Of a stretch of 64,000 nucleotides of DNA, positions 112-59,345 are shown piece after piece. The DNA lies in NCBI RefSeq assembly GCF_044704955.1, contig NC_091995.1:46252001-46316000 (forward strand), in the 5' to 3' direction. This stretch comes from Pristiophorus japonicus (lineage: Eukaryota). The first letter of the stretch is position 1, and the number at the start of each line of letters is the position of its first letter. Both the position numbers and the translations under genes were made by a program. Below the pieces are notes generated by a model that saw nothing but the letters and a program-made list of their open reading frames with translations, was not told the DNA's origin and ran no database searches.

Positions 112-1034
112 TCAGTGAAGCCATTTAACTTCCTTAAATAAATATGTTATTAATCCAAGTGGACGCTTAGTGATAAGTATCAGCTCAGCTCTGAATTTAC
201 TCTGGGACACTGCATATATAAAGGTGTTTGTGCAGGAACTCAACGTGCTAAGCATATACCCGGATTGTTCCATAATAGTGAAAGGGTCATTGTAATTCGC
301 TTGTAGAAACTGAGTATCATCAAATTGTACAAGTATATAAGATACGAATGTTACCATCCATAACAGTATAAAACTGCCAGATATAGCGAGCAATAAAAAT
401 ATGGATTTCCTTCGGTTCTCGATCTCTGGATCACTGTGATTTTCAGCATTGTTGTTTGCTCGGAGTTCCCTTCTCACCCTATTGGCCAGTACAATGTGCC
501 TGATGGTCAGAGCATTGAGCAGTAAAATTAACATAAATGGAGCAAGTGGGGTTAAAACTGTTTCCAACCACCAATATGTTACCCATATCGGTGAGGTATA
601 AAAACGTGATATTACATAGCAGGACCATGGTACATTGTCAATTATTTGCCGAGGTTCATATATAAAATAGATTGGAACACTTTCTAAGATGCTCAGCCCA
701 CTCACTACTGCTATAACCACAGCTGCAGTTTCTTTGGTGCAATACTTTGATCAAAACCGTTGGCAACAAATGGCCACAAATCGATCAAAGGTGAAAGCAA
801 CAGTTAACCAGACAGAACAATCAATTGAAGCAAAACTCAAGGAGAGATTGAGACTGCAAATGGGAGTGTAGTTCAGAAATGAATATGGAAAATAAGCATC
901 ATTAATTTCATACAGAATTACAGTAAAGATCAGGACCAGTAGATCCGCCATTGCCATGGCAACCAGGTAACTGGTGATGCATTTGGAGAGACCACAGCTT
1001 CCACGGGAGAGAACGAGAATTGTCGCTAAATTAG
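112..1034 (-). pseudogene. GPR139-like class A GPCR, exon 2 (TM1 end to C-terminus), with one in-frame TGA at 751-753
   Basis: Acceptor ttcctcctctttacag|CT AAT. ORFs 751..1137 and 112..720 are in the same frame and read ANLATILVLSRGSCGLSKC...AMADLLVL...FTFDRFVAICCQRF*SKYCTKETAAVVIAVV...SSCTNTFIYAVSQSKFR. Seven hydrophobic segments with DRF and NTFIY motifs. Confidence 0.88.
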
Positions 1035-19447: not shown

Positions 19448-22311
19448 GAAAGGAGGCTACAACGGAGGCAGCCCTTCTCTGCTCGGCATCTATGTGAAGA
19501 AATAATTAATGTGTGATACGAGTAACCTCAACCACACCCCGCATTCACCATTAGTCCCACGCTCCTTACCTTTACTCTATCACTGACCATCACGTCGTTC
19601 TCGTTCCAGCAACACAAAAATAAAAAAAGCAGACAATGCACATTTCCTGGTGGATTCCACAGGTGTGCTCATGGAGGTGCCAACCCGTTCTTATGCCTGC
19701 TGCTATGTTCGAAAGAATGGGACCGAGCTCTGCACAAAGCCCAGTGCAAAGTTAGTTTTGGACTCCTTCATGCTCCTTGACATTGAGCGCAGGCTTTCTG
19801 ACAAGCTTTCCTGTATACCGAGCCTATGGTGTATACACCCATCAGGCCTTTTCTGCACCCTGTCCCATTGAAGTCCTCATCTCAGTCCCCTGCAACAGAA
19901 ATAGTGTGTGAGCTTCTCCTCCAGTGAATTGGCGCCTGCTCTAATATTCCCACCCCTTCCACCTGTCGTTAGGTCTGCGCACTCGGTTCTGATGTCACAC
20001 CTTGTGCAGACCCCTCCTCTACATCAGCCTCTACGATTTGTGCAGAGCTAGTATCTGAATTGCTGACTGTGACTGTGTCTGTTCATCTTAACTTTCTTCT
20101 TCCTCTTTCTCCACAGATTGTCAGGATCCAGTTCTTGGGTATAAAAAGTGAAAAATGGACAAAGGTCTGGCTGTGGTGATAAGCGAGGAGATATTGTCAA
20201 GTGCATTACTAACCTCTCTGTATCTTCTCAGTGAGAAAAGATTGATGGATGAGGGAGAAGCGGGATTAAAGAAGGACATGTGAACGTAAGAAATATCAGC
20301 TGGCGTAGTTAATTTGGCCCTGAGAACATGCAACGCCATTCAATAAATCATGGCTGATCTACCTCAACTCCCCATCCCCGCCCTATCCCCAAATCTCTTA
20401 ATTCGCTTTGTTCCCAAAACTTTATCGACCTCTATCTTTAATATACTCAACAACTGGGTATCAGGAGCTCTGTGAGGTAGAGCAATCCAAAGATTCACAA
20501 TCCTTTGAGTGAAGAAATGTATCCTCATCTCAGCATTAACTGGCCGACCCCTTATTCTGAGACTATGACCCCGTACTCTGGATTTACCATCAGCGAAATC
20601 ATTTTCTCAGCATCAAACGTGTCACGCCCCTTAACAATTTTTTCAGCTAGAAATTCATTATATCCCAGGAATTGCCGGTATCATGAAACAATTTGCCGAT
20701 TTAGCACCAGGCGCTAATGCTTTAGACTGCACGCAGAATTCCTGCTCACTGCACAAAGACATGATTGGGGTCCTAATTAAAGTCTTTAAGCCCAAGCTAA
20801 TTGCAGTTACACTCGAAGGATGGACCAATATCAGGTGCTCTCTAATCACAAGCAACGCTTGCTGCCGACTTTTTTCAGTACTTAAAGGGAAGGTTCATTG
20901 ATGCTGCAGAAACTCATTCTCAGCTTTGCTGGCTGTGCAGTTCCATCAGCAAGCAGCAGCAGGATAAGGAGAATGAGCTGGAGAATGGAAGCAGCTGTAC
21001 TCATGGCAGATCCACGCCCCAGGGAGCGAGCCAGAAGATTCTGCGATTAAGCGTTGGTGTTCGGTGTGGAGAGACGGAGGGCGGTGCTCTCTCCGGCAAG
21101 TGGCAGGAGGCCCTGACCACAAGTCTTCCGTATCATGTGAACGGCAGAGGTGCAGCACGTCTCAGGCAGCACTCTGGTTCCCAGGACTCACACACAGCTC
21201 AGGAAGAAATTTAAGGACCTCGCTCGGATGGTCAGGGTGAGTGAATGCTTCAACAAATGCTGCATACCACCATCTGAACTACAATCTTGACACAGTCTCC
21301 AAAATGCCACATCCCCAGCACTTACCCACCAACAATCTCTGACTACCAACACTCACACCCACAGCTCACACCTTGCACACAATGACAGCAATTAAACAAT
21401 GGGAGGCATATCACCCAAACGCATTGCTCCACATTGACTTACAAACCTTCCTTCCTTTCGCAGGACAATTTTCCCCACAACAGGAGGGAGCAGGAGTGCA
21501 CAGGCGGAGGACAAGCCAACACCCAACCATTGTCTGCACTGTAAAATGGAGTGTCACAAATTATTGGGCGATAGATGGTGGACGCCAAGCCACCGGTGAA
21601 TTTGACCCATCTGGGGTTAACAACGGTATGTTCGTCCCTTCTCCTTCTCACATCGCAGTTCCCCCAAACCTCACAAACAGTTTACAACTTACAGCTAATT
21701 GTGTAAGCTCTGCTCCCTTCCTGGCCCCATCCCTTCACCTTAAACCATTATTGATGGTGTTTCAGCTACTGAACAAACACTGAGCAGTCTGTTGCTGAGG
21801 GGACTGTGGAGAGTGAGGCAGGAGAAGAGGAGGAGGAGGAAGAACACACCAGGTCACTGCATGTGTCACCCGCAGGCATGAGCTCCGATACTGTCACTTC
21901 GCATTCTTTAGATGCTAGTATAGTAGCGGCGCCTGCACAGGGTGAGGCACCGAGGAAGAATGGGCTGCAACAAGGGCAGGAAGGATGGGTAGCTCAGGGG
22001 CCAGCATTCTGGAAGGTGAGTTCACGCATGAACTCTGCTGCATCGGGGTCAGATGAGGAACTCGATGGGGAAGCTTTTAGAAGATGGTTGATGGGCATGC
22101 ACACGGAGATAATAGGTGCAATGGCAAGGGTGCACGACAGCTTCTCGTCATTGATAATGAGCATGGAGGGGTCCACCTCCAACTTGCACAAGGCTCTGTG
22201 CATACCATGGAGCGCATCATGTAATGTCTGAAAAGAATTGTAGACTGCCAGAGGGACAATGGCAACCAAGACCTGATGCTCCATGGGATGGCTGATGTGG
22301 CAGCTGATGTG

Positions 22312-23980
22312 GGAGGATGTAACTAGTAGAGTGGACAAGAGAGAACCAGTGGATGTGGTGATCTTGGACTTTCAAAAGGCTTTTGACAAGGTCCCACACA
22401 AGAGATTAGAGTGCAAAATTAAAGCATATGGTATTGACGTGGATAGAGAACTGGTTGGCAGACAGGAAGCAAAAGGTTGGCAAGCAGTGACTAATGGGGT
22501 ACCGCAAGGTTCAGTGCTGGGAACCCAGCAATTTACAATATACATTAATGATTTAGATGAAGGAATTGAATGTAATATTTCCACGTTTGCAGATGACACT
22601 AAGCTGGGTGGCAATGTGAGCTGTGAGGAGGATGCTAAGAGGCTGCAGGGTGACTTGGACAGGTTAGGTGAGTGGGCAAATGCATGGCAGATGCAGTATA
22701 CTGTAGATAAATGTGAAGTTATCCTCTTTGGTGGCAAAAACAGGAAGGCAGAATATTATCTGAATGGTGACAGATTAGGAAAAGCGGAGGTACAACAAGA
22801 GCTGGGTGTCATGGTACATCAGTCATTGAAAGTTGGCATGCAGGTATAGGAGGCAGTGAAGATGGCAAATGGCATGTTGGCCTTCATAGCGAGAGATTTG
22901 CGTATGGGAGCAGGGAGATCTTACTGCAGTTGTACAGGGCCTTGGTGGGGCCACACCTTGAATATTGTGTAAACTTTGGTCTCCTAATCTGAGGAAGGAC
23001 ATTCTTGCTATTGAGGGAGTGCAGCGAAGTTTCACCAGGCTGATTACCAGGATGGCAGGATTGACATATGAAGAAAGACTGGATCGACTGGGCTTATATT
23101 CACTGGAATTTAGAAGAATGAGAGGGGATCTTATAGAAACATTTAAAACTCTGACAAAATTGGGCAGGTTAGATGCAAGAAGAATGTTCCCGATGTTGGG
23201 GAAATCCAGAACCAAGAGTCACAGTCTAAGGATAAGAGGTAAGCCATTTAGGACCGAGATGAGGAGAAACTTCTTCTCTCAGAGAATTTTGAACCTGTGG
23301 AGCTCTCGACCACAGAAAGTTGTTGAGGCCAGTTCGTTAGATATGTTCAAAAGGGAGTTAGATGTGTGTGTTAGTTGTGTGTTGGTGGTGCAGTGGTTAG
23401 CATGGTTGCTTTCCAAGCAGTTGACCTGCGTTCGATTCCCAGCCATCACATTTGTCAATTTCTACTTGAGGCTGAAATGATCCTCTGATGACTCTGGTTG
23501 CAAGCAGTAAGCAGTTCTTACAGCAGCATCTCAAGGATTTTGTTGAGCAACCTGTTTTCAAAGGGTCATGTACGAATGCTTGCAATGCAAAATCTACGTG
23601 TCATCAATCTGTCATAATGTACTTGCGATTCATACTATGAGCTGTCAATTACCAAAGATATTCTATAGTCCTTACTACGAGGGGGATCAAGGGGTATGGC
23701 GAGAAAGCAGGAATGGGGTACTAAATTTGCATGTTCAGCCATGAACTCATTGAATGGCAGTGCAGGCTAGAAGGGCCGAATGGACTACTCCTGCACCTAT
23801 TTTCTATGTTGCTATGTTTCTATGTGGTCCTTACGGCTAAAGGGATCAAGGGGTATGGAGAGAAATCAGGAATGGGGTACTGAAGTTGCATGACCAGTCA
23901 AGATCATATTGATTGTTGGTGCAGGCTCGAAGGGCCGAATGGGCTACTCCTACACCTATTTTCTGTGTTTTTATGTTTCC
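22312..23980 (+). mobile_element. 5'-truncated CR1 LINE (RT C-terminal half and 3' tail), interrupted at about 23367-23822
   Basis: LDFQKAFDKVPH, GVPQGSVLG, FADDTKLGG, EFRRMRGDLIETFK; ...gggagttagatgtg continues as gtccttacggctaaaggg near 23827. Confidence 0.9.
23379..23450 (+). tRNA. tRNA-Gly(TCC)-derived sequence, probably a pseudogene
   Basis: 72 nt GTGTTGGTGGTGCAGTGGTTAGCATGGTTGCTTTCCAAGCAGTTGACCTGCGTTCGATTCCCAGCCATCACA, collinear with vertebrate tRNA-Gly-TCC. A and B boxes present; T-T mismatch in the acceptor stem and C-C in the T stem. Confidence 0.85.
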
Positions 23981-28234: not shown

Positions 28235-28251
28235 TTAAACAACATTGTAAA
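28235..28251 (-). CDS. Probable terminal coding exon of the MHC class I gene (VYNVV-stop)
   Basis: Acceptor tttgcatttcactccctag|TT TAC AAT GTT GTT TAA in the required phase 1; AATAAA signals follow at 27988-27993 and 27963-27968. Alternative terminal exons are not excluded. Confidence 0.5.
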
Positions 28252-29441: not shown

Positions 29442-29549
29442 CTCTCCGTTTTTTCCTCCACATATAGATTACAATTATAACGAAAGCCAGCGATAGCAGT
29501 ACACCCACGACAATCAGCACCACATCCTTGTCTTTTTCTACTTTGCCTT
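29442..29549 (-). CDS. MHC class I connecting peptide and transmembrane exon
   Basis: tttcag| 108 nt |gtaag, phase 1-1: EGKVEKDKDVVLIVVGVLLSLAFVIIVIYMWRKKRR. Confidence 0.85.
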
Positions 29550-31419
29550 CTGAAACATATGAGCAAGGGTTGTATAATTATATGTGTGTGGATTGACAGT
29601 TTTACATATAATCAATGGGAACCTGTGGCCCTGCTCATGCAACGATGATGCGCTGTTTTATATGTACGAGTTCCCACACCACACTGTGCACAATGTATTA
29701 TTTCACTGAGGTGGGGCCAGGTTTCTTTGAAGCCACAAAGTTCACTTTTTGTGAGTAACCACAGGTTCTGGTCCACGAGGAGAGAATGCTGTAAATGTGA
29801 CAAGGGGTGGGGGGAGGCGTGGAGAATCAAAGGCTGTGAAGAGTGAAGCACGGTTTCCTGATTGATCGGGTCTGGACCAGAGATATGAATGTGCTGCTGG
29901 GAGACCAAGGAAAGGGGTTGTGGTCGTTGTTCCCAGCGAGGCAGGAGGAAAGCGAGCTGTCCCATCCCCCACAACCACTCCTGGATCACTGGGTGAGGGG
30001 AGCCAGGTAAAGAAGTGGCAGAGGCCTGTGTCTGCGAGTCTGGTGGTAGGAGCAACATGAGGGGTAAGTAGTGGCAGTTGCATCAATGATACCCACTATA
30101 CCAGCTCCCAGGGCTGGGGGATCGAGCTTCCTACCATTCCCACAGGTCCGTGTGATGGGAGGGGGCTCAAGGTGCAAAGTTGCAGCTCATGATAATTGTA
30201 ATTAACCAAACTATCTTCAGAAAGTTTCACTTTTAATTAAATAGTAAAATGCTGATCTTTTTTTTTTAAATCGATAGCATCACGGCTGCTGTTTCAATTT
30301 CTAGGCTTATTTTGTGGGGGTTTCCACCCATCTGTACTTTGTGTTGCCCCAACCTTCACTCTTGCTACAGATTTTTGCTCTCTGGGCAAAGTCCTCATCC
30401 GCCAACTTCCTTGCCTGCAGCTCCCGGTGTACATCAGACCCATTCCCGCCTCAGGAGCCAATTCAGCCTCACCCTTGCCGTCCGGCCGCATAATCTTATC
30501 ATCGCTTCCTCAGTGCACTACATTTCAATACCCTTTCCTCACAACACTTCCACACTCCTCCTCAAGGTGACCCGTCCCCTTGTTACCCACCAGAGCAAAG
30601 AGACAACATAATCAAAAACACACTGACGCTGAAGTTTAGCACAGAGCAAACATTCAAGCTCAGAAATCGAGCAGCTCCAGAAACACAGTGCAAGGGAACA
30701 ACAATGAGAAAGCAGAAACAAACAATGAAGCAACAACAACTCGGGCAAATGAGGAGTCTGCTGTCTGAGCGTGGATGGTGAATGCAGATTAATCCATTCT
30801 CGAACCCAGATCGACTGTGAATAAGGAATTGTTTCCTATTGAACTCTGAGATCATGTGTGTGTGTGGTTGGGGAAGCCGGCGGGGTGCGGGGGCGGGGGT
30901 GGTGGGGAGGTGTATAAAGAGGAGATAGACAGTAAGAATCAATGAGAAATATATATAGAGAAAGCAAGTGTGCGGGGCGTACACAAGGAGGGGTGGGTAA
31001 AGATTATGGAAGAGTCAGAAGATAAAATAAAGTTACGAAAAGCGACAGAAAGAATGAGAAACACTCACAGGCAGCCTGAAGAACATAGATAACAAAAGTG
31101 TGGTTTTACGTGTAAATAAACTGACAGAAAGTGCAAGACAGAGAAAAGTGATGGGTAAGAAATGACAGTTATAGGGAGTGACAGATTTTAATGTTCCTGG
31201 TCGTGTCCATAAGCAACAGCACAGCAGACCAAATAAAAACACATACAAATCACTGGGAAACAGAATATCCTGTTCATTTGTAGAGTAGAGTAGAAAAGCA
31301 AGGAGGCAATGGCCAATTTGATTCGGTTATTCATTTCATTGATCCCTTTCTGCTCTCTCCCTGTATGGGATGTTTGGGATTATTGATGGATTGTTCAGTA
31401 TTGCTGCTCATGTCCTTAC

Positions 31420-31685
31420 CCCAGGGGACAGTCTTCCCACCTGACAAGCTGCTGTGTTCAATATGACAGGAGTATTGTTTCCCATCATACGGATCAAATT
31501 CAAAGCTTGTCGTTAGCTGATACGTCCATCTTCATTGGGTAATACTCCAGTAGATTTGGTCTCAGGGACATGTTCTCCATTCTTCAACCAGGTCACACTA
31601 ATGGACTGCGGGTAAAATCCAATCACAATGCAGTGGAGAAACCAACGATCACCAGCCCTGGCAATAACTGAGACCTCAGGGGAAA
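31420..31685 (-). pseudogene. MHC class I alpha3 (C1-set Ig) exon with a 1-bp deletion
   Basis: tgtag| 266 nt |gtaag. VSPEVSV...LHCIVIGFYPQSISVTWLKNG...LPNEDG then, after a frame change, TYQLTTSFEFDPYDGKQYSCHIEHSSL...W. As assembled it stops at TAA 31513-31515. Confidence 0.92.
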
Positions 31686-31894: not shown

Positions 31895-32170
31895 CTTTTC
31901 TGGTTAGTGATACATTTCCAATTGAATAGTATGTCCTCCATAAATTCACACAGTCCTTTTCTATCAAGCTCTTGAAGTAACGGTTCAACTTTGTTTCCTT
32001 ATCCCATTTCACTTTGGACGTCTGAGCTATTGGATCATGTACAGTCCAAACCAATGTGTCTTTATCAAAACTAAATGCATATCTTCCATCATAAGCCAAT
32101 TTCAGAACCCCTCCAATAGGATTGGCATCATGCAGCTCACAGCCAAACAGTCCTTGAATGTAGTGAGTAC
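31895..32170 (-). CDS. MHC class I alpha2 exon
   Basis: ttctag| 276 nt |gtaagt, phase 1-1: STHYIQGLFGCEL...AYDG...AQTSKVKWD...EKDCVNLWRTYY; both Cys present. Confidence 0.95.
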
Positions 32171-32579
32171 CTAGAACAGTTATTCAACCGATCAATAGCT
32201 ACATAATTATCGCTTTTTTCACACCGTCTGAGAACGTCAGCTATTTTCTAGTCACTGCACATCCAGTCAGTCTCTCCATTGCTTCGGGTAGAAATGGAAT
32301 TTAGTATTTGAAACAAGCATCGTTACACAGAGATATAGAATGTACAGCACAGATAGAGAACATTTGGCGCCAAATTTAGACAGGGGCTTTCTGCTTTAGT
32401 TCTATTTCCCTGCCGATGTTAATTTCTTTCTAGCATCTTCATTTTCATATATATATCGAGTTCCCTTTTAAGTTATGTTGTGGTAACTGCCTCAGTAACA
32501 TTGCATATTCTAACGGGAAAAATCCTAATTTCTACCATCCGTTGTTCTAGTGACTGTGTGCCTCTAATTAACAATTCCT

Positions 32580-33680
32580 ATGGAAACATTGAATCATACA
32601 ATGGTTAGAATACGGAAGAAGGTCATTCGGCCTGTCGAGCTGTGCCGGATCTCAGCTAATCCCACTACCCTGGCCTTTCCCGTAGCCCTGATTATTTTTT
32701 CTTTCGGATACTTATCCAATTCCTTTTTAGAGTTTGCCTCCACCCCTTCAGGCAGTGTATTCCAGACCTTAAACACTCGCTGTGTAAAACAGTATTTAGT
32801 TACGTTGCCTCAGGTTCTTTTGCCAATCACCTTAAATCTGTGTCCTCTGGTTCTCGACCCGTCTGCCAATGGGAACAGTTTCTCTCTATCTACTCTGTCC
32901 AAACCCATCATGATTTTGAACACCTCTATCAAATCTCCTCTCAATCTTCTCTTCTCCAAGGTGAACAACCCCAGCTTCTCCCGTCTATCAATGTAACTAA
33001 AGTCCTTCATTACTGGTATCATTCTCGTAAATCTTTTCTATACCTTCTCTAAGGCCTTCAGATCTTCCTAAAGTGTGGTGCCCATAATTGGACACAGTAC
33101 TCCAGTTGAGGCCGAACCAGTGTTTAAGACAGCATCGTCATAATGTCCACACTTTTGTACTCTATACCTCAATTTATGAAGCCCAGGATCACGTAAGCCT
33201 GTTTAACTGCTGTCTCAACCTGCCCTGCCACCTTAAACGATTTTTGCACATATACACCCATGTCTCTCTGATCAGGGACCCCCTTTATGATTGTACCATT
33301 TACTTTATATGTCCTCTCCTCATTATTTCTAGCAAAATGCATCACTTCACAGTTTACTGCGTTAAATTTGATCTGCCACGTGTCTGCCCTTTTCATCCGC
33401 CTGTCTATGTCTTGCTGAAGTCATCACTCGCCTCCTCATTGCTCTCTATACTTCCAACATTTGTGTCATCTGAAAAAATTGAATTTGTGCCTTTTATACC
33501 CACGTCCAAGCCATGAATATATCTAAAGAAAAGCAGTGGTCCTAGTTCCGATCGCTAGCCAATTTCGTGTCCATGCTGCCACTATCCCTTTCATTCCATG
33601 GGCTTCAATTTTGTCGAAGACTTTTTGTAAATTCATGTATAGTACCTCATTACCCTCATCAACCTTCTCTGTTAGCTCAG
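32580..33680 (-). mobile_element. CR1 LINE 3' fragment in MHC intron 2
   Basis: WQIKFNAVNCEVMHF, LEKRRLRGDLIEVFKIM, VWNTLP. Confidence 0.88.
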
Positions 33681-33944
33681 GCAGGGGAACAATTATTCAT
33701 TGTTTACTCTCTGAAAAAGCAACAAAACTTTGAAAACCTCTCACATCCTCCGCAAACCTTGTCTATTTCTGTGAAAATGCCCCACTTTTCAATTTATTTT
33801 TCATAACTACAGTCACTCATTCTAGTGAAACACTTTTCCTGGTGTTAATATAGGTGCTCAGAACTGCATTAACACGCTAACAATGTCTTAACAGTGTTTT
33901 GTGTAAGTCAGCATCAAGTCCCTGATGCTATATTCAATGCCCTG

Positions 33945-35570
33945 ATGGGGTAAAAATTGTCTTTGCCAGAAGTGGGAAATGGGCTCAGAGTGGATCAAGA
34001 GCCCAGTCTGCACTTGACCCATTTATTTCTCTGTTAACTTCAAAGATGTAACATTGGCAGCCAATTCACTATGGCCCCAAAGGAAGGGAGAATTGGGAAA
34101 GGGTGTAATGGGTGACCGTTCTACGCTGGACCGAATGGCCTCTTTCCATACGGTCTCATTCTATGATTCCATATGCCACCATTTAATATGGGAGTTGCTG
34201 CTGTAAAATGAGCAGGCTGTAATTTTACACACCTTCCGGTGGTGGCACTATAACGCCTCGGTGTTATATTGTCCAACTTTTCAACCTATACTTCTGGAAA
34301 ATCCCCAATATAAACCAACTCAACTTCTCACCATCACAATTTTCTATTAATTTTTCTACTGAACTACAGATAACATGCAAGAATATTAGCCCAGGATACA
34401 GGCCAGAATGTATGACATTATATTGGGGACTGAATTCTGTTTTAACAGCATAGGTAACATTCCCTGTCCTCCAACCTTGTTACAGTGGAATTGACACCAT
34501 GGGGGTAATTTTGACTTTTGGTGAATGTGTAAAATGGGCAATATTGGATCGGCTGCCCATTTTGCACCAGCCAGATTTTCATGTCCACTGAGGTCAATGG
34601 AAGGGAAAATCAGGCAGGGAGAAAACTGAGCAGTCAGTTTGATATCACTTATTTTACATTATTGTGCAAAGATAAAACAAAAGAGTGCATGGCTGGAATA
34701 CTGCGGGCAGTGCAGTACGCCTTTCTGATAAACCACCTGCTGGATATAAGACGGCATTAGAACCACAAAATATATACATACATATTATATAGGTGCTCAC
34801 CAATTCCATTCAACAAATGCAATAATATGAATATTGACGCTATAATTCAATAAACAAAATTTTGCCGATATGATTCAAAAATGTGATATTTCCAACGTCA
34901 TTCAATAAATCTATTACTGATATATTTCATTAAAGGTAATATTACCATGAATCAGTGGGGAGATTTTAAATTTTGGTCAAAATTTAAAGCAGGCCTGTTA
35001 TGTACCTCACCCAATGGAAATGGAATCTGAGCAAGGTGTAGAACGGGAGGCAGGTCGAATATTGATAACTTTACATTTTTGCCTGAAGAGTTAAAAATTG
35101 CCGCAACAAGCATATGATGTGTTACGTGTAAAATTACCAGCAAAACCATTCAATAAATCGAATATTATCAATACAATTAATTGAATGTAATAATACCAAT
35201 ATCATTCAATAATCACTGGTGGGCGGTGGATTTTTAAAATCTTTTATCAACAGGTGAATATGGCCAATAGTGAATCTGCCGCCCACTTTATACCATGCCC
35301 GAATTTCAGAAAATCGACACAGATGTAAAACGGCAGCTGATTCACAGGCGCCGATATTTCGCCTGTGATAATATTTAACATTTCACCCGGGAATGAAATT
35401 TTACTTCAGCAGGGTTGCGAAACGGGTGGAAGTGGAAAGCCGCCTGTTATATACCTCGGCCCATTTTACTTTCAACTGAATGGAAAGGACAATCAGACAG
35501 CATGTTTAAAGGGCGGACTCACTGCTACTGCCCATTTTATACCCGCCGACATTGAATTTCACGCTCAGTA
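33945..35570. mobile_element. Cluster of short decayed MITE-like elements (relatives near 25600-25750, 31750-31870, 36140-36400, 53600-53660)
   Basis: Recurrent gggg(t)aaaatt/aatttcaccc ends and shared aaaatggg..atat..gatcggctgccc cores. Confidence 0.45.
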
Positions 35571-35809
35571 TTAAAAATATCACTAATTGGAGATAATGGC
35601 ACCTTCCAGACATTGTACAAAGTAGGCCATATCCAATTAGTTCCCCATTGTACACCTCGCTTGATGTTCCTTTCTATTGAAGGTATAATGGAATGGAAAA
35701 TCAGGCGGGGTGGACAATGGGCTATCCATTCGATATCGCTGATGGCAGGAATCCCCCAAGTTTAAATGACCCCACAGTTTATTGCATTCATTCAAATCAA
35801 TCCACTCAC

Positions 35810-36070
35810 TTGATGTTTGGCTGCCCTGCTGTAGCCATCTATCAAACTGTCCCTTGATGATACCGTGGAAACCCGCTTGAGTGATTGTGAATTCTTCCCA
35901 GTATCGCTTGTTAAATGCTTTCGCCATCCAGTGCTGTCTTGGAACAGTTATGTTCATATTATCGTCGTAATAGGTTGTCTCAGAGCCGTCCAAACGTCCC
36001 AGGAAACTATACTCCGGCAGATCAGCACTCCCATGGCTCAGGGTGTAGTAATATAGCAGAGAATGAAACA
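35810..36070 (-). CDS. MHC class I alpha1 exon (divergent, non-classical)
   Basis: ttccag| 261 nt |gtgagt, phase 1-1: FHSLLYYYT...LPEYSFLGRLDG...YYD...PRQHWM...YWEEFT...GSQTS. Confidence 0.95.
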
Positions 36071-54440: not shown

Positions 54441-54492
54441 CAGACAGGGCCGCTTGTAGGTGGTGGAAGTTCAGTACAAGTGACAGAAACAT
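54441..54492 (-). CDS. Signal-peptide exon of the MHC class I gene (MFLSLVLNFHHLQAALS)
   Basis: ATG at 54492; 52 nt ending G|gtgagt (phase 1, giving V-FHS when joined to alpha1); CpG-rich context about 110 nt downstream of an X1-X2-Y module. Confidence 0.72.
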
Positions 54493-54600
54493 GCCGTCCC
54501 GTCCGCTCGCCGCCTCTCCCAGTTACAGGCCGAGACTGAGCGCTTTGAATGGACCCGAGTCCAGCTTCACTCATATGTAGTCGCTGCAGGAGCTCACCGT

Positions 54601-54645
54601 CCAATCGCAGTAAAACATGTGGATCCGTCACTGGTTGTCAAGGAC
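54601..54645 (-). promoter_or_regulatory. MHC-type X1-X2-Y promoter module
   Basis: Minus strand GTCCTTGACAACCAG (RFX/X1-like), TGACGGA (CRE/X2), 18-nt spacer, ATTGG (Y box). Confidence 0.72.
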
Positions 54646-56898
54646 TGTCCCTAAACCGTGAAGATACAATCATAGAATGGTTACAGCACAGACGGAAGCC
54701 ATTCGGTCCATTGAGCCCGTGCCGGCTCTCTGCAAGAGCACTTCAGCTAGTCCCAATCCCCACCCTCTCGGAGGCCTTCACGTCCTTCATAAAGTGCTGT
54801 ACCACAATTGGACACAGTGCTCCAGTTGAGGCTGAACCAGTGTTTTATAAAAGTTTATCATAACTTTTGTACTCTATGCCTTCATTTATCAAGCCCATGA
54901 TCCCGTAAGCTTTTTAACGTCTTTCTCACCCTGCCCTGTCACCTTCAGTGATTTGTGCACATATACCACTGGTCATTCCGTCAATGTACTCCCTTTAGGA
55001 TCGCACCATTTAGTTTATATGTCCTCCCCTCATTCGTTCAACCAAAATACATCATTTCACACATTTCTGCGTTAAATTTCAGCTGCCCCGTGATTCCACC
55101 AGACTACGTATGTCCTCTTGAAGTCTATCACTATCCTCCTCACTGTTTATTATATTTACAAGTTTAGTGTCATCTACAAAGTTTGAGATTGTGCCTTGTA
55201 CACCCAAGTCTAAGTCATTAATATATATCAAAAAACAGTGGTCCTAGTACAGACCCTTGGGGAACATCACTTTATACCATCTCCTGTCCAATAAACAACC
55301 GTTCACCACTACTCTCTGTCTCCTGTCATTTAGGCAATTTTCTATCCATGCTGCCAGTGTCCCTTTTATTCCATGGGCTTCAACTTGCTGGCAATTCTGT
55401 TACTTGGCATTTCATCAAATGCCTTTTGGAAGTCCATGTACACCACATCAACCGCAGTGCCCTCATCAACCATCTCTGTTACCTCATCAACAAACTCAAT
55501 CAGGTTAGTTAAACACTATTTGCCTTTTACAAATCCGTGCTGAATTTCCTTAATGAATCCACATTTGTCCAAGTGACTGTTAATTTTGTCCCGGATTATC
55601 ATTTCTAAAAGCTTCCCCACTACCGAGGTTAAACTGACTGGCCGGTAGTTGCTGGGTTTCTCCTTTTTCCCTTTTTTGAATGTTTGCAATTCTCCAGACC
55701 TCTAGCAACACTCCCGTATCTAACAAGGATTGAAGGATTATGTCCAGTACCTCCACAATTTCCAACTTTACCAGCGTCAGCATCCTAGAATGCTTCCCAT
55801 CTGGTCCTAATGGTTACCTACTTTAAGTGCAGACAGCCGTTCTAGTACCTGCTCTTTATCAATTTTTATCCCATCCAGTATCTCAACTACCACCTCTTGC
55901 TCTATGACTTTGGTAGCATCTTCTTCATTGGAAAAGTCAGATGCAAAGTGCTAATTTAGCAACTCGGCCATGCCCTCTGCCTCCATGCTAGGTCTCCATT
56001 GTGGTCCCGAATAGGCCCCACTCCTTCTCTTACCACCTGTTTACTAGTTATACGACTATTGAAGACTTTTTGATTCCCTTTTATGTTAACTGTCAATCTC
56101 TTCCCTCACTCTCTCGTTGCCCCCCTGATTTACTTTTTCATCTCCCCGCTGAACTATCTGTATTCAGCCTGGTTGTCACTTGTATTCTCAACCTGATATC
56201 TGTCATACGCCCCCTTTTTCTGCTTCATCTTACTCTATCTCTTGTCGAAATCTCGACCTCAGAAAAGAATGACTCCGACACTTACAACTCCGATGGAAGT
56301 TTCCCTTTTAATTTACTTGCTCGCAAGGGGTAGGTTTCACTCAGTCAAGGGCTAAACGAAACCTCCGCAATGGTACAGCTTCACAAGATATTTATACAGT
56401 AAAACCCAAGTTCTGGCCTCTCCCTGTGTATTGCTCTGTCTCACAGTCAGTGAATACAGATAAAGAGTTAATTACTATATCCTGGTCCTGAAATGGTGTC
56501 AAGATATTTCCTTTTGTCAGGGTTATCAGAAAGCCAAACGGCCATTACTCCATGAGTCATAGGTAATGGGCTATCACCTGTCTTGTATTGTATCAGGATT
56601 ATCCAATTTCCTGGTCAGTTTACCTGTTTGCTTCAAATGGATGAGGTAAAGGAAAGAGATAATGGCTAGAAGATAAGGGTGGGGTGACATGGAACTCCTG
56701 TAGTGTAGACAATAGGAGAGCACCATGGGGGGTTACTTGTCTCAGCATGACTTGTCTCCTAGCTGTCTGATAACCATCAGCCATCTAACAGCAGGTTTAG
56801 CTGTTCATAATAAGCTGGCTATCAAAAATGCAGAAAGTTCTGGAAGGGCCAGGACTCCATTTTAATCAAAAGGCACACAAATACCGTATGGTATCAGC

Positions 56899-57543
56899 TT
56901 AGATAAAAATACATTTCCACATTCCCCCATTTTGTCCTTCACAAGGACAACTCAATCCATTCTGATCTTGTACAGTCTCTCCATTTCCATTTCTTTTAGT
57001 TTCATTACTCACTAGGCATATTATACCCTCAGGATTTCCTATTCTGGGAGTAATGCTTAGGAAGGGAGGCTGATGGTTATTATCATAATTGGGCTGGTAC
57101 CATCCCTGGAAGGCTGTAAGTTTATACCCTGCCGACCTCCATTCTGTTTGCTCCTTTGTTTCTGGCCCCTTAGTTAGTTTTGTCCTGTTTTGCACTGTCA
57201 ACCATTCTACCATTTCTGATTCGTTAAAGGGGACAGATCTCAGGGGAATACCCCCCCTGGAGTGGACAGGTACATGGGAACATATCCAGCAACTCGACAA
57301 GTTTCTTTCTTGAGCATACCTATGACTCAGTGCCATAAATACGTTTACGTGCAATTCCCTTCGGTGGTGGGTCTGTACCCCTGGTGTAATCAATAATGTG
57401 AAGTAAAACCCTGTCAATCCCAGCACCATCAGTCCCCATAGTCCATACAGTTCCTTATTCAGTCTTCCTTTTTCTGTTCCTCTGATTCCTTCGTCCCTTC
57501 CTCCTGGTCGGGTGCCCGTTTGCAATGGGATGCGTGGATCCAT
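56899..57543 (-). CDS. env: Truncated Env ORF (signal region and N-terminal SU with CWIC, no TM subunit)
   Basis: aacATGg overlapping the pol end; hydrophobic LYGLWGLMVLGLTGFYFTLLI; NLSSCWICSHVP motif; the ORF runs through the PPT into the LTR. Confidence 0.8.
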   Translation of the reverse strand: MDPRIPLQTGTRPGGRDEGIRGTEKGRLNKELYGLWGLMVLGLTGFYFTLLITPGVQTHHRRELHVNVFMALSHRYAQERNLSSCWICSHVPVHSRGGIPLRSVPFNESEMVEWLTVQNRTKLTKGPETKEQTEWRSAGYKLTAFQGWYQPNYDNNHQPPFLSITPRIGNPEGIICLVSNETKRNGNGETVQDQNGLSCPCEGQNGGMWKCIFI

Positions 57544-59345
57544 GTTGGTCTTTCCTTTACCTTGATTGCAGTATTGGTTGCCAGCAAGACCTGGTATGGT
57601 CCTTCGAATCTTGGCTGTAGACTGCTTTTCCTTTTAAAAATCTTGATGTAAACAAATTCCCCTGGCTCCAGGTTATGACACTTCCCTTCCGCTGGCTTGA
57701 CTTGGGCTTCCTTTACCTGTGAATGAAAGCTGGAAATACATTTGGTTAGTGCAATACAATAATTCAACATATTTTCCTCCATTTTGTGGATGTCCATCTG
57801 TTTTGCAGTAAATGGTGCTGTAAAAGGTAGTCGTTGGGGACGTCCCATAACTATCTCATGTGGTGACAAGCCTGTTGTTCTGTTGGTTGCAGATCGCATT
57901 ACCATCAAAGCTAAGGGCAGCAGTTCTGTCCATTTCAGTCCAGTGTCATTGCATAGTTTTGCCAGCTTATTTTTAAGCATTCCATTATATCTTTCAACAA
58001 GTCCAGCTGATTGTGGATGATAACTGCAATGAAAACGTTGATTAATCTGTAAAGCTTTACACATTTCTCTTATGACAGTTCCCGTGAAATGTGACCCGTT
58101 ATCACTGGAAAGCTTAGCAGGGATTCCGAAGCGCGGTACAATTTCTTTTAACAAACATTTAGCAACAGTAGTGGCATCGACCTTTTTACATGGAAAGGCT
58201 TCAATCCATCTAGAGAACACATCTACAATAACTAATACATACTTGAATCCCATACACATAGGTAATTCAATAAAATCCATTTGTAAATGTACAAAAGGCC
58301 CGACTGGATTTGGGTGGGAGGCAGATTCTACTTTTTCCGTCTTACCCGGATTCATTGTCTGACAGGTAACACAATTTTCACAGATTTGTTTTGCAATTGC
58401 CGAAATACCTGGTGCATACCAAGTTGCCAAAATATAATCTGCCAATCCCCCTTTGCCTGCATGTGTGAATGTATGAACACATCGGGCAATCCATGGAAGT
58501 AAGGATCTAGGGGCCACCACGCGGCCGTCATGGTGAACCCATATTCCTTCTGGATTTTTATAACATTGATCCTTCGTCCAGGTCACCACCTCCTCCGTAC
58601 TGGCCTGTGTCTGAAAGGCCAGCACGTCATTAATAGTGGGTGGCGGGTCTGAGCAATTATTTTTCCTTAGTGGGAACAATGACACCTGCATCCCCCCTTT
58701 CGACAGAGCTGCTGACTTAGCTGCATTATCAGCTCTGGCATTCCCAAGTGCCACCTCATTCGACTGGCCTGTATGTGCTTGGCATTTGATAATGGCAAGT
58801 TTTATGGGGCATTGAATGGCTCGCAGGAGATTTTCCACTTGTTCTGCATTTTTGATAGGGGTTCCTGAAGAAGTCAGGTACCCGCGAATCTTCCAAATTT
58901 GTCCATAGTCATGTGATACCCCAAAAGCATACCTGGAGTCAGTGTAGATATTAACTGTGTGTCCTTCAGCCAGAATACAGGCTCGAGTTAACGCAAACAA
59001 TTCGGCTTGTTGGGCTGAAAAGGAGTCTGGAAGAGAGGCTGTTTCGACAACATTAAACTGAGTTACAATTGCATAAGCTGCTCTCAGTTGGCCCCTATCA
59101 TTTCGTAAGGCTGATCCGTCAACATAGTACACTAGCTCAGGGTTACACATTGGTACATCTGTTAGATTGATACGTGGTTTAGTCACTAATTCGGTTACCA
59201 TTTCACATGAATGGGGTTCGCCGTCGTCTTCCGTGGGGAGTAGAGTGGCTGGATTTAAGGTAGTACATCTTTTGATGACAAGGTTCGGATTTGATAACAG
59301 TTCGACCTCATATTTAGTGGTTCTTGCGGAGGTTAGGTGGCACAC
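57459..59345 (-). CDS. pol: Pol C-terminal part: RNase H and integrase, open for 628 codons
   Basis: YVDGS...QQAEL...YTDSRY...GNARAD; HHCC; QMDF...SSDNGSHF...VERYN; GPY and WIHASH. Separated by a frameshift from the connection domain (59333-59692). Confidence 0.92.
   Translation of the reverse strand: MCHLTSARTTKYEVELLSNPNLVIKRCTTLNPATLLPTEDDGEPHSCEMVTELVTKPRINLTDVPMCNPELVYYVDGSALRNDRGQLRAAYAIVTQFNVVETASLPDSFSAQQAELFALTRACILAEGHTVNIYTDSRYAFGVSHDYGQIWKIRGYLTSSGTPIKNAEQVENLLRAIQCPIKLAIIKCQAHTGQSNEVALGNARADNAAKSAALSKGGMQVSLFPLRKNNCSDPPPTINDVLAFQTQASTEEVVTWTKDQCYKNPEGIWVHHDGRVVAPRSLLPWIARCVHTFTHAGKGGLADYILATWYAPGISAIAKQICENCVTCQTMNPGKTEKVESASHPNPVGPFVHLQMDFIELPMCMGFKYVLVIVDVFSRWIEAFPCKKVDATTVAKCLLKEIVPRFGIPAKLSSDNGSHFTGTVIREMCKALQINQRFHCSYHPQSAGLVERYNGMLKNKLAKLCNDTGLKWTELLPLALMVMRSATNRTTGLSPHEIVMGRPQRLPFTAPFTAKQMDIHKMEENMLNYCIALTKCISSFHSQVKEAQVKPAEGKCHNLEPGEFVYIKIFKRKSSLQPRFEGPYQVLLATNTAIKVKERPTWIHASHCKRAPDQEEGTKESEEQKKED

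What the first reader, a model, noticed from the sequence alone, without database searches (positions are those of the whole stretch)
31895..36070. Divergent MHC class I molecule with a hydrophobic groove, likely not a peptide binder
Seen (manual alignment, HLA-A2 numbering): Y7, Y59, K146, W147, Y171, C101-C164 and beta2m contacts T10, Q96, D119, G120 are kept. R/Y84 is Q, Y123 is A, T143 is S, Y159 is L, W167 is L, E63 is F, and the N86 glycan site is lost (SQT), with new sequons NIT and NVS. Groove-facing positions are mostly hydrophobic: F24, F63, F70, I73, I74, W81, I95, F99, L114, L116, L152, Y155, F156, L159, L167. Inference: a non-classical molecule binding lipids or small hydrophobic ligands, or with an occluded groove. 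I cannot tell by eye whether it belongs to a described cartilaginous-fish lineage (UBA, UCA, UDA, UEA and others) or a new one.
Basis: partly seen in the sequence, partly recalled or inferred. Interest (0 to 1): 0.8.

Follow-up and report, generated by a model that had tools for sequence, protein, structure and literature searches.

The report
Broken sawshark UGA class I copy
This is a shark MHC class I-like gene of the already named and crystallised "UGA" lineage, which is reported to hold lipids instead of peptides, but this copy has a one-base gap that probably disables it.

Summary
A six-exon MHC class I-like gene lies on the minus strand, with alpha1 and alpha2 at the stated coordinates.

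It is not a new lineage. Alpha1 and alpha2 match PDB 9CH4 at E 1e-36 and 9e-43. That entry is titled "Crystal structure of shark nonclassical MHC CLASS I, UGA", released 2026-03-18.

One or a few related genes occur in each of 13 shark and ray species. The altered groove residues are shared across that lineage. A 2025 review reports, from a personal communication, that UFA and UGA are CD1-like and bind lipids.

The nearest protein is a Japanese sawshark model, P0151, 94-98% identical per exon piece.

This copy lacks one base in the alpha3 exon. A stop follows four codons later, ahead of the second Ig cysteine and the membrane anchor. It has also lost the N86 glycan site, which 17 of 17 relatives keep.

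The only spliced transcripts found come from a diverged sister copy.

Verdict: a probably dead or null copy of a known lineage. Other notes of this scan report similar class I genes elsewhere on this chromosome.

The parts
54441..54492 (-). Leader exon (ATG at 54490-54492; 17 codons plus one base of a split codon; GT donor follows)
   Evidence: translates it as MFLSLVLNFHHLQAALS. This matches 16 of 17 residues at the N-terminus of the sawshark model P0151. The intron to alpha1 is about 18.4 kb.
35810..36070 (-). Alpha1 exon (261 nt, phase 1 at both ends)
   Evidence: PDB 9CH4 E 1.1e-36. 97.7% identical to P0151. Its 3' border fits the spliced contig X5 record 18. Ser codon at 35820-35822 where 17 of 17 relatives have Asn.
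32171..35809 (-). Intron 2, 3.6 kb, filled with interspersed repeats
   Evidence: Summed contig depth reaches about 1.4 million at 32799-32959, against about 20-30 in unique parts. ORFs there resemble reverse-transcriptase remnants; I did not search them.
31895..32170 (-). Alpha2 exon (276 nt)
   Evidence: Pfam MHC_I E 4.8e-15. 9CH4 E 9.2e-43. 95.6% identical to P0151. Both borders match the spliced contig X5 record 18, which lies at 31895-32168.
31420..31685 (-). Alpha3 exon, 266 nt, one base short. Frame A runs from 31683 down to the Gly codon at 31525-31527. Frame B starts at 31525. Read straight through, a stop falls at 31513-31515.
   Evidence: The two frames match P0151 residues 200-251 and 252-286, which are contiguous. 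C1-set domain E 5.3e-10 and 0.0083. An extra base behind 31525 is seen in paralogue contigs.
29442..29549 (-). Connecting peptide and transmembrane exon
   Evidence: One search gives KVEKDKDVVLIVVGVLLSLAFVIIVIYMWRKKRR. It is close to the P0151 stretch EGKVEKDKDVVLIVLGVLLSLAIVLIVIYMWRKKRR. AG/GT borders are visible.
28235..28251 (-). Candidate last coding exon: split codon, then YNVV and a stop (a YxxPhi tail)
   Evidence: 9 of 17 UGA relatives end in YNAV, YNVI, YNVV, YNTV, YQTI, YENI or YESI just after the basic stop-transfer cluster. Not confirmed by a transcript.

Best explanation
The locus is a Japanese sawshark paralogue of UGA, a non-classical MHC class I lineage found across sharks and rays. 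Its crystallised member is PDB 9CH4.

The gene has the usual class I layout: leader, alpha1, alpha2, alpha3, transmembrane and a short tail. It spans 26 kb on the minus strand.

The groove changes are inherited lineage characters, not peculiarities of this copy. The 84, 143, 159 and 167 anchors for peptide ends are lost, and F70, I74, W81, F99, L114, Y155, F156 and L159 are conserved.

Inferred mechanism for the lineage: the heavy chain pairs with beta2-microglobulin, holds a lipid-type ligand in a groove that no longer clamps peptide termini, and is routed through endosomes by a YxxPhi tail, as CD1 is.

This copy has a one-base deletion in the alpha3 exon that brings a stop four codons later. 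The product would lack half of the Ig domain, its second cysteine, and the membrane anchor. It has also lost the otherwise invariant N86 glycan site.

So it is most likely a recently inactivated duplicate or a null allele. Diverged sister copies carry the expressed function.

Shown: fold family, lineage, exon structure, the frame break, expression of a paralogue. Inferred: lipid binding, endosomal routing, loss of function.
For: Lineage:
- 9CH4 matches at E 1.1e-36 and 9.2e-43. Its title names UGA.
- The folded sawshark relative P0001 matches 9CH4 at Z 23.9, 69% identity.
- In the domain-wise trees the window's alpha1 pairs with P0151 (SH-aLRT 99) and its alpha2 does too (96).
- The 18-row UGA clade has support 99 on alpha2 and 58 on alpha1.
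- UGA plus the P0006 lineage has support 99 on alpha1.

Spread: relatives occur in 13 species.

Groove residues are conserved across the lineage.

Lipid reading: PMC12562908 and PMC10751288 (passages).

Frame break:
-.
- The two frames map to adjoining residues 251 and 252 of P0151.

Signs of decay:
- N86 is Asn in 17 of 17 relatives and Ser here.
- Leu258, nearly invariant in alignment A1, is Phe here.

Expression:
- The spliced contig X5 record 18 differs from the window at 37 of 233, 23 of 274 and 7 of 267 letters, and carries the extra base.
- No contig of this copy's exons was seen in X5 or X6.

Tail: YNVV exon; 9 of 17 relatives carry YxxPhi.
Against: - The break is a GGG run read as GG, a common kind of assembly error.
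- The contig data cannot prove that a DNA contig spans the site in the window's state. Depth is one figure per contig, and shared flanking contigs may end at the site.
- 2 DNA contigs per run, and both RNA-like runs, carry the in-frame form.
- Every splice site and every other exon is intact. Only a handful of residues differ from the intact model P0151, so any inactivation is very recent.
- The DNA contigs of sample S1 read Asn, not Ser, at the N86 codon (35821 C>T, 26.1 of 26.1 and 19.9 of 19.9). That loss is therefore not fixed and could be an error.
- Lipid binding rests on a personal communication quoted in a review. I found no primary paper.
- My crude hydrophobicity count barely separates UGA from other shark class I.
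- Contigs show presence, not absence, so this copy could still be expressed.
Confidence: 0.62

Rival explanations
1. The gene is intact and working. The missing base is an assembly error or is confined to one haplotype. The locus then encodes a functional UGA-type, CD1-like molecule, allelic or nearly identical to the annotated sawshark model P0151.
For: - All six exons and their splice sites are present.
- It is 94-98% identical to the intact P0151.
- The break lies in a short G run.
- In-frame contigs exist in DNA runs X1 and X3.
- Sample S1 also differs from the window at the N86 codon, so the window's sequence is not the only form in the species.
- The neighbouring receptor gene is shared with skate, which fits an old, maintained locus.
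Against: - Most of the contig depth at the site lacks the extra base: 98 of 117 in X1 and 89 of 111 in X3.
- The in-frame contigs have the depth of the diverged paralogue (about 9-10).
- In the RNA-like runs the in-frame form sits in a contig that differs from the window at many other places.
- No transcript of this copy was seen.
- Two substitutions fall at otherwise conserved sites.
Confidence: 0.3
2. It represents a new cartilaginous-fish class I lineage, or a new kind of ligand binder, distinct from UAA to UGA.
For: Alpha1 alone is only weakly similar to classical class I (E 2e-09 to shark UAA; Pfam just below the cut-off). No held paper describes UGA sequences.
Against: About 70% identity to the crystallised UGA. 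It nests inside a clade of 17 database proteins from 13 species.
Confidence: 0.02
3. It is a classical or classical-like peptide-presenting class I gene.
For: Y7, Y59, K146, W147 and Y171, the disulphide, and the listed beta2m contact residues are kept.
Against: Residues 84, 143 and 159 of the eight termini-binding positions are changed, as are 123 and 167. It groups away from the other elasmobranch class I rows.
Confidence: 0.02

Closest known systems
Shark non-classical MHC class I UGA (PDB 9CH4, released 2026-03-18)
   Same: Same fold and same lineage. Alpha1 and alpha2 align without gaps at about 70% identity. The conserved blocks AGFHGIIKGQ and MNRYFK-LLE-DC are shared. The cysteine pair and groove residues F70, I74, W81, F99, L114, Y155, F156, L159 and L167 are the same.
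   Different: Different species. This copy has a frameshifted alpha3, Ser in place of the N86 glycan Asn, and a few private groove states shared only with P0151 (F63, S143, L152).
Japanese sawshark UGA-type gene models P0151, P0001 and P0002 (UniRef, Pristiophorus japonicus)
   Same: Same species and gene family. P0151 is 97.7, 95.6, 98.1 and 94.3% identical over alpha1, alpha2 and the two alpha3 pieces, and its leader is nearly identical.
   Different: Those models have an open alpha3 and the N86 sequon. P0001 and P0002 are only 74-75% identical in alpha1. None of the three models uses a YxxPhi last exon.
The sister elasmobranch lineage of P0006 and P0166-P0176 (probably UFA; the name is my inference)
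   Same: One gene per species in sharks and rays. It groups with UGA at SH-aLRT 99 on alpha1. It shares GFHG-KG, Y155, F156, L159 and a hydrophobic groove (median 34 of 45).
   Different: Only 38-47% identical to the window's domains. It has no YxxPhi tail (0 of 12). It reaches Pfam's CD1-type model in the precomputed annotations. No separate solved structure was found by sequence.
CD1 (mammals, birds, reptiles)
   Same: Works alike according to the review: a beta2m-associated class I fold with a lipid-type ligand. It shares a tyrosine-based YxxPhi tail (the CD1 motif is recalled knowledge; here). Chicken CD1-1 is among the tied structural matches (Z 20.6).
   Different: No sequence-level membership. 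Pfam MHC_I_3 scores 18 bits against a cut-off of 35, while MHC_I scores 56. The one CD1b-like row sat on a long branch outside the clade. Structural Z values for CD1, ZAG, YF1*7.1, HFE and classical class I are all tied within 1.
Chicken YF1*7.1 and zinc-alpha2-glycoprotein (class I-fold lipid or fatty-acid binders)
   Same: Class I sequence type with a hydrophobic groove that binds acyl chains. ZAG is the second-best structural match (Z 21.0), and alpha2 matches it at E about 4e-12.
   Different: Unrelated lineages of birds and mammals, with about 27-30% identity.

Membership tests
Elasmobranch UGA lineage | Close sequence similarity to the crystallised UGA heavy chain (9CH4) | tested here: met
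   E 1.1e-36 for alpha1 and 9.2e-43 for alpha2, gapless. Entry title.
Elasmobranch UGA lineage | Falls inside the clade of 9CH4-like proteins in domain-wise trees | tested here: met
   The 18-row clade has SH-aLRT 99 on alpha2 but only 58 on alpha1. The window pairs with sawshark P0151 at 99 and 96. 9CH4 itself was not a row; its nearest relatives were.
Elasmobranch UGA lineage | Lineage-typical groove residues (F70, I74, W81, F99, L114, Y155, F156, L159, L167) | tested here: met
   All are present in the window and in 14-17 of the 17 relatives per position.
Elasmobranch UGA lineage | Conserved N-glycan sequon at position 86 | tested here: not met
   Asn in 17 of 17 relatives, Ser in the window. 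DNA contigs of sample S1 read Asn.
Elasmobranch UGA lineage | Open reading frame through alpha3 and the membrane anchor (a working member) | tested here: not met
   The alpha3 exon is one base short, with a stop at 31513-31515. An assembly error is not excluded.
Elasmobranch UGA lineage | MHC linkage, single or low copy | tested here: inconclusive
   The window holds one class I gene. There are at least 3 further sawshark models. Earlier notes of this scan place other MHC genes on the same piece; I did not check them.
Elasmobranch UGA lineage | Binds lipid ligands | not testable with these tools
   Only a personal communication quoted in PMC12562908.
CD1 | Matches the CD1-type alpha1-alpha2 domain model (Pfam MHC_I_3) above threshold | tested here: not met
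   18 bits against a cut-off of 35, whereas MHC_I scores 56 bits.
CD1 | Groups with CD1 in phylogeny | tested here: not met
   The single CD1b-like row (P0250) lay on a long branch outside the UGA and sister clade. One row is a weak test.
CD1 | Groove markedly more hydrophobic than in peptide binders | tested here: inconclusive
   29 of 45 here, against a median of 28 (range 21-32) in 57 other elasmobranch rows. Positions were mapped by a recalled alignment.
CD1 | Tyrosine-based YxxPhi endosomal motif in the tail | tested here: met
   YNVV-stop exon. 9 of 17 UGA relatives carry it. That the motif defines CD1 is recalled knowledge.
Classical class I (UAA-type) | All eight peptide-termini residues (7, 59, 84, 143, 146, 147, 159, 171) | tested here: not met
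   The window reads Y Y Q S K W L Y, so 5 of 8 are kept (alignments).

The most novel reading that the evidence does not exclude
The sawshark has turned the normally single- or low-copy UGA gene into a small, diversifying family. There are at least four copies with different groove states: residue 63 F or Y, residue 143 S or F, residue 152 L or M. There are also signs of exchange between copies, because alpha1 sits nearest P0001 after P0151 while alpha2 sits nearest P0002. In this reading the window's copy lies at the ancestral position beside a conserved receptor gene and is a polymorphic locus whose frameshifted form is one segregating null allele. That would give a lipid-presenting lineage classical-like copy-number and allelic variation.
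Probability: 0.2. Interest if true: 0.45.

Novelty: new member of a known kind. Interest (0 to 1): 0.25.

Why it matters
UGA and UFA are the evidence that CD1-like, lipid-type antigen presentation may be as old as jawed vertebrates. The lineage is already named, crystallised and present in gene catalogues, so this locus does not change that picture.

What it adds is modest:
- Sawsharks carry several UGA copies, at least one of which appears to be decaying.
- The lineage, unlike its sister lineage, keeps a CD1-style YxxPhi tail.
- A conserved receptor gene flanks the locus in shark and skate.

These points are useful for annotating shark MHC-Ib regions and for choosing which copy to express. 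They are not a discovery.

Tried and rejected
- A new lineage or a new kind of molecule: rejected by the 9CH4 match and the trees.
- A classical peptide binder: rejected by the anchor states.
- A second class I gene in the window: none. tblastn of the four exon pieces against the window found only the pieces themselves.
- A distinctive hydrophobicity score for the groove: tried. It did not separate the window (29 of 45) from other elasmobranch class I (median 28). Those 57 rows were retrieved by likeness to a non-classical query and aligned to a UGA-based profile, and only 1 of them shows the full classical signature, so they are a poor classical control.
- Structural neighbours as a guide to function: below 9CH4, the Z values of ZAG, chicken BF2, YF1*7.1, CD1-1, HFE and MR1 are tied, so the fold says nothing about the ligand. 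The model itself was middling (mean pLDDT 74.7, pTM 0.52). It is of the relative P0001, not of the window's protein.
- Primary literature. Searches for 9CH4 (18 unrelated papers) and 8GM8 (none) gave nothing. Searches on shark, non-classical class I, crystal structure, UFA, UGA, CD1 and lipid gave only PMC10751288 and PMC12562908, of which I read passages. I also read passages of PMC13337447, which were not relevant. A UGA or UFA paper may exist outside the held library.
- Supplements: I did not open any. The query set in supplementary file S10 of PMC10751288 could bear on the lineage names.
- Proving the frameshift from reads: only contigs were available, so it stays unproven.
- Naming the sister lineage: P0168 finds no closer solved structure than 9CH4, so 'UFA' for that clade is my inference.
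- Rows left out of the trees: of 250 stored proteins, 249 matched the profile and 130 covered at least 85% of it. I used the 95 of those whose source names I had seen. The unnamed representatives among P0004-P0150, apart from P0006, were dropped.
Full report
WHAT IS THERE

On the minus strand lies a complete class I-type gene of about 26 kb. Its exons are:
- Leader, 54441-54492, translating as MFLSLVLNFHHLQAALS (context).
- Alpha1, 35810-36070 (86 whole codons).
- Alpha2, 31895-32170 (91 codons).
- Alpha3, 31420-31685.
- Connecting peptide and transmembrane exon, 29442-29549.
- A candidate last exon, 28235-28251, encoding YNVV and a stop.

All borders are AG/GT and phase 1, as in class I genes generally.

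The three ectodomain borders are confirmed independently. A 775-letter spliced contig (X5 record 18) lies at 35808-36040, 31895-32168 and 31419-31685.

Pfam assigns alpha2 to MHC_I (E 4.8e-15). Alpha1 falls just under the cut-off alone (E 4.1e-06). The two alpha3 pieces match the C1-set Ig domain.

tblastn of the exon pieces against the whole window finds no second class I gene.

- Kept: Y7, Y59, K146, W147, Y171 and the alpha2 disulphide.
- Changed: F for E63, A for Y123, S for T143, L for Y159, L for W167.
- Q stands at the 84 position.
- S-Q-T replaces the N86 sequon.
- New N-I-T and N-V-S sequons are present.

The HLA-A2 numbering is from my recalled alignment. I used no human sequence.

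One part of the description is weaker than it sounds. On a crude count over 45 groove positions the window has 29 hydrophobic residues. UGA relatives have a median of 31. The 57 other elasmobranch class I rows have a median of 28, range 21-32. What sets the molecule apart is the loss of the residues that clamp peptide ends and a set of conserved lineage residues, not bulk hydrophobicity.

WHICH LINEAGE

Both domains match one solved structure far better than any other. 9CH4 chain A scores E 1.1e-36 and 9.2e-43, gapless, at about 70% identity. The next best score is E 2e-09 for alpha1 and 4e-16 for alpha2.

Instead I folded the sawshark relative P0001 with an alignment of 18 family proteins. 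I used that model only to read the entry's title: "Crystal structure of shark nonclassical MHC CLASS I, UGA", released 2026-03-18 (Z 23.9, 69% identity; Foldseek E 1.1e-37).

A full-database HMMER search with alpha1 and a follow-up search with P0001 give 17 family proteins from 13 species:
- Sharks: Pristiophorus japonicus (three models), Heterodontus, Heptranchias, Chiloscyllium, Stegostoma, Cetorhinus, Scyliorhinus, Mustelus.
- Rays and skates: Rhinoraja, Leucoraja, Pristis (three models), Hemitrygon, Mobula.

In the domain-wise trees of 96 rows:
- The window's alpha1 and alpha2 each pair with sawshark P0151 (SH-aLRT 99 and 96).
- The 18-row UGA clade has support 99 on alpha2 and only 58 on alpha1.
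- UGA joins a second shark-and-ray-wide lineage (P0006, P0166-P0176) at 99 on alpha1. On alpha2 the support is 81, with three long teleost rows drawn in.

That second lineage is probably UFA. This is my inference only. Its sawshark member finds no closer structure than 9CH4.

WHAT THE LINEAGE IS SAID TO DO

I read passages of two papers.
- PMC10751288 mentions an unpublished elasmobranch MHC-Ib lineage, UFA, "very similar to CD1" in its binding region, which maps in an MHC-Ib cluster.
[quoted passage not shown] It adds that crystal structure and mass spectrometry suggest they bind lipids like those of human CD1d.

I found no primary paper in seven searches.

One feature I add: 9 of 17 UGA proteins end in YxxPhi directly after the stop-transfer cluster, against 0 of 12 in the sister lineage. 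The window has a matching YNVV exon. From recalled knowledge of CD1 tails, this suggests AP-dependent endosomal routing.

By sequence the molecule is class I-type and not CD1-type: MHC_I scores 56 bits, and MHC_I_3 scores 18 against a cut-off of 35. The structural matches below 9CH4 are all tied. So it may work like CD1, but it is not shown to be a CD1 family member.

THIS COPY LOOKS BROKEN

The alpha3 exon is 266 letters where 267 are needed.
- Frame A reads through ...LPNEDG.
- Read straight on, it gives GRIS and a stop at 31513-31515.
- Frame B, starting one base back, reads TYQLTTSFEFDPYDGKQYSCHIEH....
- The two pieces match residues 200-251 and 252-286 of P0151, which adjoin. Exactly one base is missing, from a run of three G.

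The product would end before the second Ig cysteine and have no membrane anchor.

Two further changes hit conserved sites:
- Asn86, present in 17 of 17 relatives, is Ser here.
- A nearly invariant Leu of alpha3 is Phe here.

WHAT THE READS SAY

Seven runs of the same species were listed. Four were DNA runs of one sample, and three came from another study. Only contigs were available.

At the break, contigs with an extra base carry depth 18.8 of 117.1 in X1 (2 contigs) and 21.6 of 110.5 in X3 (2 contigs). In X5 and X6 the only contig at the site carries it (11.3 of 11.3 and 12.7 of 12.7).

The X5 and X6 contigs are spliced and so derive from RNA. They differ from the window at 37 of 233, 23 of 274 and 7 of 267 letters. 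They belong to a diverged paralogue, closest in pattern to P0002.

No contig of this copy's exons appeared in those runs. That is not proof of silence.

Most DNA depth at the site lacks the extra base. However, depth is one figure per contig, and shared flanking contigs may stop at the variant. So I count this as consistent with a real deletion, not as proof.

The DNA contigs also read Asn at the N86 codon (35821 C>T, 26.1 of 26.1 and 19.9 of 19.9). The window's Ser is therefore either an allele or an error.

WHOSE GENOME, AND HOW MANY COPIES

Earlier notes of this scan call the genome Japanese sawshark. That fits the 94-98% identity to the P. japonicus model P0151. P0151 still differs at about nine residues over the ectodomain and is not this sequence.

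With P0001 and P0002 the species has at least three or four UGA-type genes. Other first-reader notes list further 'hydrophobic groove' class I genes at -0.4, +2.2, +3.3 and +5.2 Mb on the same piece, and one follow-up calls a gene at +7.2 Mb UFA. I checked none of these.

SURROUNDINGS

- Intron 2 (3.6 kb) is packed with very high-copy repeats.
- Intron 1 is about 18 kb.
- At 112-720 on the same strand, 27.5 kb beyond the gene's end, lies the last part of a rhodopsin-type receptor gene (Pfam 7tm_1). It is 68% identical to the C-terminal part of a skate gene model that fuses UGA domains to this receptor (P0165). The two genes are therefore probably neighbours in skate as well.
- A retrovirus-type pol ORF lies at 57459-59345.

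VERDICT

It is not new. It is a sawshark copy of UGA, with a crystal structure and public models of close relatives. This copy is probably inactive.

Novelty: a new member of a known kind. Interest: low to moderate.

Noticed in passing
window 112-720 (-): Last exon of a rhodopsin-family receptor gene (Pfam 7tm_1, E 3.3e-08). It is 68% identical to the C-terminal part of skate model P0165, which fuses UGA alpha1-alpha2 to this receptor. UGA and the receptor are therefore probably neighbours on one strand in both sawshark and skate.
   Followed up: partly
window 57459-59345 (-): A 628-codon open frame with RNase H, integrase core and an MLV-type integrase C-terminal domain: a retrovirus-like pol remnant 3 kb upstream of the leader exon. 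Only scanned against Pfam.
   Followed up: no
window 32640-33760: Very high-copy interspersed repeats inside intron 2. Summed contig depth reaches about 1.4 million, against about 20-30 in unique sequence.
   Followed up: no
window 54550-54660 (-): The stretch upstream of the leader exon that another first-reader note calls an X1-X2-Y promoter module. I confirmed the leader exon only, not the module.
   Followed up: partly
window 28235-28251 (-), and tails of P0152, P0155-P0162: UGA proteins end in a YxxPhi motif (9 of 17) while the sister lineage does not (0 of 12). None of the three public sawshark models uses this exon, which suggests their 3' ends are mis-modelled.
   Followed up: partly
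window 22283-22849 (+): Reverse-transcriptase fragment (Pfam RVT_1, E 2.1e-18), one of several LINE-type remnants between the class I gene and the receptor gene.
   Followed up: no
alpha1 versus alpha2 trees: After P0151, the window's alpha1 is nearest P0001 but its alpha2 is nearest P0002. This hints at exchange between sawshark UGA copies. Supports are modest (74 and 90).
   Followed up: no
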